Source of the DNA: Lytechinus pictus
Lineage: Eukaryota
Assembly: GCF_037042905.1 (NCBI RefSeq)
Contig: NC_087256.1
Location: 21,886,001-21,950,000 of the forward strand
Direction: 5' to 3'
DNA length: 64,000 nucleotides
The notes under the pieces are model-generated. The model had not been told where the DNA came from. It was given only the letters and a program-made list of their open reading frames with translations, and made no database searches. The stretch's first letter is position 1. Each line of letters opens with the position of its first letter. The translations under genes were made by a program, and so were the position numbers. Positions 37,001-40,000 of this stretch are shown here, piece after piece.

Positions 37001-40000
37001 GAGACTTCTACACAAGTTGACTGGTATGGTGTGCATTGTCTTTTCAAGAACATCAAGTGATATCAGAAGTGCCACAAGAAACTGTTTTGGTCCCCTATTT
37101 CTGGTTTACATGAAAGACATAGCAGATAATACATCCTGCAACTTCCTATTTTTTTGCCGATGAAGCTGAAATATACTGCAAGACAAAACTCTCACAAATA
37201 TGTTATAAAAAATAAGAATTATGGTCACTTTAAAATACATTCAACCAAATCATTAACTTACCAAGGACTCTTCTTGATACACTAGGATCAAGGAAGTCAA
37301 GAGGTGCGTCTTCTTTCTCTCCTTCCTTCAACCATGCCTTGCCTCGCTGACCTGCCACCTTCTTTGTCTTGCGACCTTTGACCTTTGACTTGGCATCTTT
37401 GGCGTCCTCATCCTCCACATCACTCTCTGAGTCTGTTTCCTGAAGAATCTCCTCGATGCTGTAATAATAAAAACAATGCAGGGAATTTGTCAAGTGCACA
37501 TATCCACCCTGTTACATGTAGGTGGTCAAAGAGCTCCTATATTAAGCCAGCAAAACTTGTCTACCGATTCCGGTGCTCACAGCTTTTTGAGGTATTACTT
37601 CCTGCCGGTAACCATTTACATGTACCTCACCTGGGTTGAGTGCAGCACATTGAGGATCAATTTCTTGCTGAAGGAAATTACGCCATGGCTGGGATTGGAA
37701 CCCACGACCTTCTGTTTCAAAGTCTGGAGACTAATCAACTGGGCCAAAATGCTCTAGATTGGCTTTTAAATGTTAATCTGTCTCATATTACATGGAACTC
37801 ACAAATTAAAGACAGTTTTCCTTCAAAGAACCTGGCTAAATATATTCAAAATTGTTGGTCTTCGAGTTTAGACAAGCCAAAGTATTAACTCAAAATAAAA
37901 AAAACAAAAAACAAACACAAAATACATGTTCATCAAAACTTCACTTTCATAGCAGCAATTTGTAATCTACTCTATTGCAATAAAACGTGAACACCTATCC
38001 CTTTACCTTTACAAATGAGGCTATGATCAATTGATGTTATTATCACCATATCCTTTCTATTCAATATATCCTTTATCTTATTTTATATTGTAAAAATTTG
38101 CAATATCATTATTCTCTATCCTTTGCCTTTCTGAACTGAAACCTCTAATGCTTTACTTCAGTATCTTTTCTCAGATAATATAAATTTCAAATAGAAAGGA
38201 CCCTTTTTTATAAAATTCATACCTTTCAGGTTTAGGTTTCTGTGGTACGAGGGCATCAAAATCCTCTCCTTCCTCGTCCTCGCCCCCCTCTTGATCGCCC
38301 TGTTTGGATGCAGCCTTGAGAGCCTTGTGCCTCTTGGTCCGTTCCTGGGTCTTCTTGATGTTGTGCACCATCTTCTGATGGTGGTCTGGGATCATCTTCC
38401 TGATCATCTCGTACCTGGAACGAAAGATGGAAAATTCAAGATTGGGTTTAAAGGTGGTTGGTTTCAATCAGCAAAATGCTTCTTAAGGTAGGGAGGGATG
38501 TCTTCTGGACAATCTTGTTCCAAGGAGAAAGATTCAAGATCTGAAATACAGTTTGTAAATTCACAAGGGGCATTTCAATCTAGTCACCATCTTCTAATGG
38601 TGGTCTGGGATCATCTTCCTGATCATCTCGTACCTAGAATGAAAGAATCCAAGATTGGGTTTAAAGGTGGTTGGTTTCAATCAGCAAAATGCTTCCTAAG
38701 GTAGGGACGGATGTCTTCTGGACAATCTTGTTCCAAGGAGAAAGATTCAAGATCTGAAAAACAGTTTGTGCTAAATTCACAAGGGGCATTTCAATCTGGT
38801 CACCATCTTCTGATGGTGGTCTGGGATCATCTTCCTGATCATCTCGTACCTGGAATGAAAGATGGAAAATTCAAGATTGGGTTTAAAGGTGGTTGGTTTC
38901 AATCAGCAAAATGCTTCTTAAGGTAGGGACGGATGTCTTCTGGACAATCTTGTTCCAAGGAGAAAGATTCAAGATCTGATTAACAGTTTGTGCTAAATTC
39001 ACAAGGGGCATTTCAATCTGGTCACCATCTTCTGATGGTGGTCTGGGATCATCTTCCTGATCATCTCGTACCTGGAATGAAAGATGGAAAATTCAAGATT
39101 GGGTTTAAAGGTGGTTGGTTTCAATCAGCAAAATGCTTCTTAAGGTAGGGACGGATGTCTTCTGGACAATCTTGTTCCAAGGAGAAAGATTCAAGATCTG
39201 ATTAACAGTTTGTGCTAAATTCACAAGGGGCATTTCAATCTGGTCACCATCTTCTGATGGTGGTCTGGGATCATCTTCCTGATCATCTCGTACCTGGAAT
39301 GAAAGATGGAAAACTCAAGATTGGGTTTAAAAATGGTTGGTTTCAATCAGCAAAATGCTTCTTAAGGTGGGCAGGGATATCTTCCGGACAATCTTGTTCC
39401 AAGGAGAAAGATTCAAGATCTAAAATATAGTTTGTAAATTCACAAGGGGCATTTCAATCTAGTCACCATCTTCTGATGGTGGTCTGGGATCATCTTCCTG
39501 ATCATCTCGTACCTGGAATGAAAGATGGAAAATTCAAGATTGGGTTTAAAGGTGGTTGGTTTCAATCAGCAAAATGCTTCTTAAGGTAGGGACGGATGTC
39601 TTCTGGACAATCTTGTTCCAAGGAGAAAGATTCAAGATCTGATTAACAGTTTGTGCTAAATTCACAAGGGGCATTTCAATCTGGTCACCATCTTCTGATG
39701 GTGGTCTGGGATCATCTTCCTGATCATCTCGTACCTGGAATGAAAGATGGAAAATTCAAGATTGGGTTTAAAGGTGGTTGGTTTCAATCAGCAAAATGCT
39801 TCTTAAGGTAGGGAGGGATGTCTTCTGGACAATCTTGTTCCAAGGAGAAAGATTCAAGATCTGAAAAACAGTTTGTGCTAAATTCACAAGGGGCATTTCA
39901 ATCTGGTCACCATCTTCTAATGGTGGCCTGGGACCATCTTCTGGATAATCTCTCATAATAGGAAAAAAATGGAAAATTCAAGATTGGGTTAAAGGTGGTT

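What the first reader, a model, noticed from the sequence alone, without database searches (positions are those of the whole stretch)
38366..39960. Array of six 46-nt candidate poison exons cloned from RRP12 exon 21, lying directly upstream of it
Seen: each ~220-bp unit copies the real acceptor region (ccatctttc.ttccAG) and the first ~48 exon bases almost perfectly. Where the real exon continues ATG-GTGCAC, the copies read ATG|GTGACC or ATG|GTGACT, a plausible 5' splice site. This defines AG..GT-bounded 46-nt units at 38633-38588, 38849-38804, 39071-39026, 39293-39248, 39512-39467 and 39734-39689. Inclusion of one unit shifts the frame, and read-through without the donor hits TGA within about 8 codons. 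Inference: an essential ribosome-biogenesis gene must bypass six near-identical upstream acceptors. The array may be a copy-number-tunable NMD rheostat, or a natural test of exon definition.
Basis: partly seen in the sequence, partly recalled or inferred. Interest (0 to 1): 0.75.

Follow-up and report, generated by a model that had tools for sequence, protein, structure and literature searches.

The report
Unused copied splice acceptors in RRP12
A 222-base piece straddling an intron/exon border of the ribosome-assembly gene RRP12 has been copied in tandem, leaving six look-alike splice acceptors ahead of the real one, but the assembled RNA of four runs joins only the real one, so it is a tolerated repeat of a known kind ("mirage"), not a shown control device.

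Summary
On the minus strand, a 222-bp tandem array (38366-40043, 7.6 copies, 93% matches) repeats the 3' splice site and first 48 nt of an RRP12 coding exon (38414-38223). Six copies are AG..GT-bounded 46-nt units at exactly the stated coordinates.

Inclusion of one, two or three units, or read-through, always meets a stop codon.

In transcript contigs of four public runs (two studies), the exon 20 donor (40624) is joined directly to the true acceptor (38414). No contig lies on the array and no joint touches a decoy. Contigs cannot exclude rare, NMD-degraded isoforms.

The array is young: three units are identical. It is also nested: each unit is a dimer of an older ~111-bp unit, and 75-83% identical relics fill the upstream intron.

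This is the "mirage" class, meaning minisatellites that span an exon/intron boundary. They are described in amphioxus, where they do not disturb splicing. This scan has already noted many such arrays elsewhere in the same genome, and a second one sits at another exon of this same gene.

The "NMD rheostat" reading has no support. Verdict: a new member of a known kind, of low interest.

The parts
42293..42452 (-).
   Evidence: Piece of the spliced transcript contig in all four runs (table 8).
40624..40715 (-). RRP12 exon 20 (92 nt), donor TGG|GTAAGT with GT at 40623-40622
   Evidence: Contig piece 40621-40715 with joint 'cut +3'. It translates to ...[10 protein letters not shown]. It has the strongest U1 pairing in the region, -11.9 kcal/mol.
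38415..40623 (-). Intron 20 (2209 nt). Apart from its first ~130 nt and a ~220-nt spacer at 40081-40299, it is made of nested copies of its own 3' end plus the exon start.
   Evidence: The joint skips 2209 nt with GT..AG ends on the minus strand in four runs. Repeat content.
40300..40491 (-). Oldest relic copies of the junction (75-83% identical to the young unit). One keeps TAG|GTACGA (AG at 40346).
   Evidence: blastn of the unit against the window; anchored search; families D3-D6.
39909..40080 (-). Degenerate older 222-type unit (79% identity). Its junction half has lost the AG, and its other half keeps TAG|GTATGA (AG at 40059).
   Evidence: and sequence.
38366..39908 (-). Young array of seven 216-223-bp units (a-g). 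The last unit (g) is the authentic intron end plus exon start. Units b, d and e are identical.
   Evidence: TRF; unit alignment and pairwise differences.
39689..39734 (-). Decoy unit 1: CAG| + 46 nt + |GTGACC
39467..39512 (-). Decoy unit 2: CAG| + 46 nt + |GTGACT
39248..39293 (-). Decoy unit 3: CAG| + 46 nt + |GTGACC
39026..39071 (-). Decoy unit 4: CAG| + 46 nt + |GTGACC
38804..38849 (-). Decoy unit 5: CAG| + 46 nt + |GTGACC
38588..38633 (-). Decoy unit 6: TAG| + 46 nt + |GTGACT. It has a 6-nt deletion in the pyrimidine tract and one C>T change in the exon-like part.
38223..38414 (-). Authentic RRP12 exon 21 (192 nt), acceptor ...tttcgttccag|, donor AAG|GTATGA
   Evidence: Contig piece 38223-38411(+3) in four runs. 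The translation aligns to human RRP12 1017-1064, E=1.2e-4.
37262..37458 (-). RRP12 exon 22
   Evidence: Contig piece joined to exon 21 in four runs.

Best explanation
This is a 'mirage' minisatellite: a tandem duplication whose unit straddles the intron 20 / exon 21 border of RRP12.

A segment running from about 174 nt inside the intron to 48 nt inside the exon was duplicated head to tail, by replication slippage or unequal exchange (inferred). Only the last copy remains joined to the rest of the exon. Every added copy therefore lands inside the intron and leaves the coding sequence untouched.

This happened in at least two rounds. An old ~111-bp unit has since decayed. More recently, a 222-bp dimer (one decayed copy plus the live junction) was amplified to seven units.

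The decoys keep the branch region, pyrimidine tract, AG and 48 exon bases of the true site. Even so, mature mRNA uses only the true, most downstream acceptor (shown at the level of assembled transcripts).

The most likely reason is exon definition (inferred). Only the true acceptor is followed by the purine-rich 192-nt exon body and a proper donor (AAG|GTATGA). A decoy is followed by a 46-nt stub, a donor lacking +5G (GTGACC) and then intron sequence.

Any occasional use of a decoy would give a stop codon and probably decay. The array is therefore tolerated noise rather than a regulator.
For: Array anatomy.

Local origin: there is no copy elsewhere in the 64-kb window, and no contig lies on the array although dispersed repeats nearby reach depths of thousands.

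Direction of copying: the exon start encodes conserved RRP12 residues, the gene carries RRP12_HEAT, and an orthologous exon with the same intron position lies on an independent contig, L001.

Splicing: in each of four runs from two studies, one contig joins 42293-42452 | 40621-40715 | 38223-38411 | 37262-37458. Depth is 0 over 38438-40461 and there is no joint at any decoy. These contigs carry SNPs against the window, so they are not the assembly itself.

Youth and turnover: units b, d and e are identical, and a differs from g by 1.4%. The nested dimer structure shows 61/75 identical aligned columns. Older relics are 75-83% identical.

Context difference: the exon remainder is 65% purine, against 47% in the stretch after a decoy. 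The decoy donor matches 4-5 of 9 consensus positions, against 6-7 for the confirmed donors.

Known class: mirages in amphioxus do not disturb splicing (PMC3087553; PMC3902484). Many further cases are noted in this genome.
Against: The RNA evidence is assembled contigs only, at modest depth (about 22-188x). Contigs drop rare variants, and NMD would lower the level of any decoy-containing isoform further.

Tissue and stage of the runs are unknown.

By simple U1 pairing, the decoy donor (-5.1 kcal/mol) is barely weaker than the true exon 21 donor (-5.7). Donor strength alone therefore does not explain the choice.

The exon-like 48 nt vary less among units than the intron-like part: 1/48 against 27/174 columns, p=0.012 by columns and about 0.05 by events. 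This could hint at gene conversion from the exon or at constraint.

Copy number was not confirmed with independent DNA reads.
Confidence: 0.8

Rival explanations
1. Functional poison-exon array or NMD rheostat. A set fraction of transcripts splices in a 46-nt unit and is destroyed, so that array length tunes RRP12 output.
For: Each unit is AG..GT bounded and every inclusion gives a stop. The exon-like part of the units is less variable than the rest.
Against: No inclusion contig and no decoy joint in four runs. The array is very young, with identical units, unlike conserved poison exons. The same structure occurs at many unrelated genes in this genome and at a second exon of this gene, which fits a mutational by-product. 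The decoy donor lacks +5G and -2A.
Confidence: 0.04
2. Recursive splicing chain. Exon 20 is first spliced to an upstream decoy. The junction regenerates a donor (TGG|GTACGA against the native TGG|GTAAGT), which is spliced onward step by step until the true exon is reached. The final mRNA then looks the same as after direct splicing.
For: Every acceptor is an AG|GTACGA juxtaposed 3'/5' site. As donor look-alikes these are the best in the intron after the native donor (7/9 consensus, -7.1 kcal/mol). The regenerated site scores like the other weak sites here (-5.3). The end product cannot be told from direct splicing.
Against: Known recursive sites lie in very long introns, whereas this intron is 2.2 kb. 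The AG|GT arises simply from a Gly-Tyr codon pair; the ortholog on L001 has ag|CTATGAG. The same regenerated donor exists at the real exon 20/21 junction and is not used, since exon 21 is retained in all contigs. No intermediates could be looked for.
Confidence: 0.05
3. Assembly artefact. The array, or its copy number, is a mis-assembly of a shorter repeat or of two haplotypes.
For: Three units are identical, so their number rests on the assembler. No independent DNA reads could be laid, and no contig of the four runs covers intron 20. An amphioxus mirage was reported as mis-assembled in a draft genome (PMC3087553).
Against: At least five distinct unit types (a, b, c, f, g) carry private substitutions and indels in a fixed order. 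Unit c lies between identical b and d, and older diverged relics lie upstream. This cannot come from over-expansion of one unit. At most, the count of the b-type units could be wrong.
Confidence: 0.07

Closest known systems
'Mirage' minisatellites of amphioxus (Adh3, globin BflGb6/BflGb9, troponin C, PGBD5)
   Same: A tandem repeat whose unit spans an intron/exon boundary and carries the splice signal. BflGb6 repeats the 3' end of an intron plus the 5' part of the exon, with units of 150-160 bp that are 81-100% identical. Regular splicing is not disturbed. Central units evolve in concert while edge units differ (PMC3087553; PMC3902484).
   Different: The host is an echinoderm-type RRP12 gene. 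The unit is a 222-bp dimer that re-amplified an older decayed mirage. Each decoy also happens to end in a GT, giving a closed 46-nt pseudo-exon. Length polymorphism and somatic instability, shown for Adh3, were not tested here.
Human F7 intron 7 37-bp VNTR (donor-side pseudo-sites)
   Same: The first element of a minisatellite spans an exon/intron border, so the authentic site is accompanied by identical pseudo-sites that stay silent (PMC1557585).
   Different: In F7 the donor is repeated and the first, most upstream site wins. Here the acceptor is repeated and the last, most downstream site wins. What the two share is that the winner is the site joined to the real exon body.
Poison (NMD-coupled) cassette exons of splicing and ribosome-related genes
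   Same: A short AG..GT-bounded unit whose inclusion introduces a premature stop.
   Different: Poison exons are seen included in RNA, are regulated and are usually deeply conserved. Here no inclusion is seen in the assembled RNA and the units are evolutionarily recent.
Recursive splice sites (AG|GTAAGT ratchet points)
   Same: Juxtaposed acceptor and donor consensus, CAG|GTACGA, at each unit.
   Different: The intron is short, the motif is a by-product of codons, and there is no evidence of intermediates.
Intron gain or growth by tandem duplication across AGGT (Rogers model; Hellsten et al. 2011, PMC3265369, listed but not read)
   Same: Tandem duplication that includes AG|GT creates spliceable sequence without harming the reading frame. 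Here most of a 2.2-kb intron is built from such copies.
   Different: No new intron is created. An existing intron, whose position is conserved in the ortholog, is only lengthened.

Membership tests
Mirage minisatellite | Head-to-tail tandem repeat of minisatellite type | tested here: met
   Period 222, 7.6 copies, 93% matches; units aligned.
Mirage minisatellite | Repeat unit spans an exon/intron boundary and includes the splice signal | tested here: met
   The unit runs from intron -174 to exon +48. The boundary is fixed by the RNA joint at 38414, and the AG is present in six upstream units.
Mirage minisatellite | Authentic site is used; the mRNA is normal | tested here: met
   Spliced contigs in four runs join 40624 to 38414 and nothing lies on the array. 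This holds at contig level only.
Mirage minisatellite | Length instability or polymorphism between haplotypes | not testable with these tools
   The only indirect sign is three identical units and a higher-order 441-bp period. No DNA reads were available.
Poison exon (NMD-coupled cassette) | Inclusion isoform detectable in RNA | tested here: not met
   No contig or joint involves a decoy in four runs. Rare isoforms cannot be excluded, because contigs drop them.
Poison exon (NMD-coupled cassette) | Inclusion introduces a premature stop upstream of further exon junctions | tested here: met
   One 46-nt unit gives TGA inside exon 21. Two or three units, and 222-nt inclusion, also stop.
Poison exon (NMD-coupled cassette) | Evolutionary conservation of the cassette and regulated inclusion | tested here: inconclusive
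   Units differ by 0-7%, so they are recent. The only ortholog contig found has 42 nt of intron and says nothing about an array. Regulation is not testable here.
Recursive splice site | Juxtaposed 3' and 5' splice consensus (YnNCAG|GTRAGT) | tested here: met
   ttcattccag|GTACGA, 7/9 donor consensus matches.
Recursive splice site | Splicing intermediates or saw-tooth nascent RNA pattern; long host intron | not testable with these tools
   Only assembled contigs were available. The intron is 2209 nt, far shorter than known hosts.
RRP12 gene (host) | RRP12 HEAT-repeat domain and C-terminal region homologous to RRP12 | tested here: met
   PF08161 RRP12_HEAT on four exon pieces, best E=7.4e-28. 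Exon 21 aligns to human RRP12 1017-1064 in 7wts_K.

The most novel reading that the evidence does not exclude
The decoy acceptors are in fact used co-transcriptionally. Because each is an AG|GTACGA junction, splicing of exon 20 onto a decoy regenerates a donor that is spliced onward. The array would then be crossed by a chain of recursive steps and leave no trace in the mRNA. It would be a natural, copy-number-variable series of recursive splice sites inside a short intron.
Probability: 0.05. Interest if true: 0.7.

Novelty: new member of a known kind. Interest (0 to 1): 0.2.

Why it matters
As a single locus it matters little. It adds one more case showing that everything from -174 to +48 around a 3' splice site, including branch region, pyrimidine tract, AG and 48 exon bases, is not enough for that site to be chosen. 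The site joined to the full exon body wins over six earlier-transcribed twins.

Taken together with the many similar arrays noted in this genome, it suggests that boundary-spanning minisatellites are common outside amphioxus. Such arrays are a ready-made panel for testing rules of splice-site choice, and they are one route by which introns grow.

Tried and rejected
1. Independent genomic contigs, sought by exact-protein look-up of two window ORFs: nothing on record.

2. Homology search with the 98-aa ORF across exon 21: one hit, a 59-aa ORF on a 507-nt ENA contig. It confirms the exon and the intron position in another species. It holds only 42 nt of intron, so it is silent on the array.

3. 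RNA structure that could hide the decoys: the unit folds no better than shuffles (z=-1.03) and there are no inverted repeats of 14 nt or more. Only a 6-bp hairpin, CACCAT..ATGGTG, sits at the unit's end.

4. Rfam at gathering thresholds on 37000-42700: no match.

5. Dispersed-repeat or transposon origin of the unit: rejected, because there are no copies outside intron 20 in the window.

6. Exonisation of a repeat (copying in the reverse direction): rejected, because the shared 48 nt encode conserved RRP12 residues.

7. Donor strength as the sole discriminator: not supported by U1 duplex energies.

8. Not tried: the organism name given in earlier notes (Lytechinus pictus) was not checked.

9. 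Not tried: the exon numbering was not checked.

10. Not tried: the N runs at 7474-7770 and 15624-15850 were left alone.

Full report
**What is there.**

Read on the minus strand, 38366-40043 is a tandem array with period 222 (alternative period 441), 7.6 copies, 93% matches and score 2904. An anchored search finds the string AG|GTACGAGATGATC seven times at about 220-bp spacing. The AG lies at 39736, 39514, 39295, 39073, 38851, 38635 and 38416.

The six upstream copies share the pyrimidine tract, the AG and the next 48 bases with the last copy. They then read GTGACC or GTGACT where the last copy continues GTGCACAAC.

**The host gene and the direction of copying.**

Exon-sized open frames on the minus strand of the window hit Pfam RRP12_HEAT (best E=7.4e-28). 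The exon that ends the array translates to [21 protein letters not shown]... It aligns to residues 1017-1064 of human RRP12 in solved pre-ribosome structures (7wts_K, E=1.2e-4) and to a fungal RRP12.

A 507-nt contig from an unrelated public assembly (L001) carries an orthologous exon with the intron at the same place. The 48 shared bases are thus old coding sequence. The exon is the source and the intronic units are the copies.

The unit has no other copy in the 64-kb window. No transcript contig lies on it, while nearby dispersed repeats reach depths of thousands. It is therefore a local duplication, not a mobile element.

**History.**

The seven units (a-g, upstream to downstream) differ by 0-16 substitutions:
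- Units b, d and e are identical.
- Unit a differs from g, the authentic copy, by 1.4%.
- Unit c is the most diverged and lies between identical units, the signature of unequal exchange or conversion.

Each 222-bp unit is itself a dimer. Its upstream half aligns to the acceptor-plus-exon half with 61 of 75 aligned columns identical, but has lost the AG.

Further upstream lie relics that are 75-83% identical, at 39909-40080 and 40300-40491. Two of them still carry TAG|GTA.

Most of the 2209-nt intron is thus built from at least two rounds of duplication of its own 3' end. An old ~111-bp unit decayed, and a 222-bp dimer was amplified recently.

**What the RNA shows.**

Five runs held part of the stretch, and four were laid. 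In each of the four (two studies), one spliced contig of 909-1757 nt joins 42293-42452, 40621-40715, 38223-38411 and 37262-37458. The skipped parts have GT..AG ends on the minus strand.

The exon 20 donor (last exon base 40624) is joined to the true acceptor (first exon base 38414), skipping 2209 nt. Depth is zero in every bin from 38438 to 40461 in all four runs, and no joint starts or ends at a decoy.

The contigs carry two single-base differences from the window, so they are not copies of the assembly.

These are assembled contigs at modest depth. They show the main product, but they cannot exclude rare or NMD-degraded forms. Raw reads were not on offer.

**Consequences of using a decoy.**

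With the corrected exons (exon 20 is 92 nt, exon 21 is 192 nt), a local translation gives the following:
- One 46-nt unit shifts the frame and meets TGA inside exon 21.
- Two or three units meet TGA in the second or third unit.
- Inclusion of a whole 222-nt unit, or read-through, stops after ...VTRLKCPL.

**Why the last acceptor wins (inference).**

The acceptors are practically the same. The true one has G where the decoys have A at -7, and decoy 6 has a shortened tract. The difference must therefore lie beyond +48.

The remainder of the true exon is 65% purine with 11 GAR triplets in 143 nt. The same length after a decoy is 47% purine with 7.

The true exon ends in AAG|GTATGA (6/9 consensus positions, with +5G). 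The decoy stub ends in ATG|GTGACC (4-5/9, no +5G).

Simple U1 pairing energies are close (-5.7 against -5.1 kcal/mol). Donor strength alone is thus not the answer, and exon-body context is the likelier reason.

The donor-side counterpart is the human F7 intron 7 minisatellite, where the first of several identical donors is used (PMC1557585). In both cases the site joined to the real exon is chosen.

**Comparison with what is known.**

[quoted passage not shown] They were found again in amphioxus globin, troponin C and PGBD5 genes.

The globin BflGb6 case repeats the 3' end of an intron plus the exon start in units of 150-160 bp that are 81-100% identical. It varies in copy number between haplotypes and does not disturb splicing (PMC3087553; PMC3902484).

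The present array meets the three defining features that could be tested. Polymorphism could not be tested.

Earlier notes of this scan report the same structure at many other genes of this genome, including BRCA2, DDX19, Vps34, NCAPG, CSTF3 and WDR11. Those notes name the genome as the sea urchin Lytechinus pictus, which I did not check. I used the notes as leads and checked the 'mirage' literature myself.

A second such amplification sits at another exon of this same gene, with three copies 92-94% identical to intron -58..exon +92.

**Rivals.**

*Functional NMD rheostat.* It has the right anatomy, but there is no RNA support, no conservation, and the structure recurs genome-wide as a by-product. 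I give it 0.04.

*Recursive splicing chain.* The AG|GTACGA junctions allow it, and the final mRNA cannot exclude it. But the intron is short, the motif follows from a Gly-Tyr codon pair that the ortholog spells differently, and the same regenerated donor is not used at the real junction. I give it 0.05.

*Assembly artefact.* It is unlikely for the array as a whole, because at least five unit types occur in a fixed order together with older relics. The number of identical b-type units remains unverified. I give it 0.07.

**One loose end.**

The exon-like 48 nt vary less among units than the intron-like part: 1/48 against 27/174 columns, p=0.012 by columns and about 0.05 when indels are counted as single events. 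The units are related by descent, so this is weak evidence. Gene conversion from the constrained true exon would explain it without any function for the decoys.

**Verdict.**

It is a tolerated boundary-spanning minisatellite of a known kind, and its decoy acceptors are unused in the available RNA. The regulatory reading is unsupported. Interest is low (0.2).

Noticed in passing
window 54300-56500 (-): A second boundary-spanning amplification in the same gene. A ~150-bp piece (about 58 nt of intron plus 92 nt of an RRP12 exon encoding ...[25 protein letters not shown]...) has three further copies, 92-94% identical, at 56035-56184, 55837-55985 and 54609-54751, plus a partial one at 56440-56492. 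About 1.1 kb of other sequence lies between the second and third copies. It was already noted as s1-327739.
   Followed up: partly
window 33752-36040: A 102-bp minisatellite of 22.6 copies (93% matches) in another RRP12 intron. With further arrays at 36353-36735, 11012-11818 and 23878-24112, the window is rich in minisatellites.
   Followed up: no
window 37518-37885, 41014-41197, 41382-41749: Intronic stretches with summed contig depths of about 800-40,000 in all four runs. They are presumably dispersed, highly represented repeats (transposon-derived), in contrast with zero depth on the array.
   Followed up: no
window 38366-38383 and the same place in each unit (-): The unit ends in a small perfect hairpin, CACCAT-CAGAAG-ATGGTG. 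The array boundary, and the GT of the decoy donor, lie in its 3' arm. This is possibly where slippage or template switching set the breakpoint.
   Followed up: partly
window 40081-40299 (-): A ~220-nt stretch that interrupts the old relic copies and is unrelated to the unit. It may be a small insertion; it was not identified.
   Followed up: no
window 37389 and 42365: Single-base differences (C>A, A>T on the + strand) between the window and the transcript contigs of several runs, in RRP12 exons. They are probably allelic variation between individuals.
   Followed up: no
L001 400-507 (+): The 507-nt ENA contig with the orthologous exon carries a second called open frame (36 aa, running off the contig end) about 170 nt after the exon's donor. 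It was not examined.
   Followed up: no
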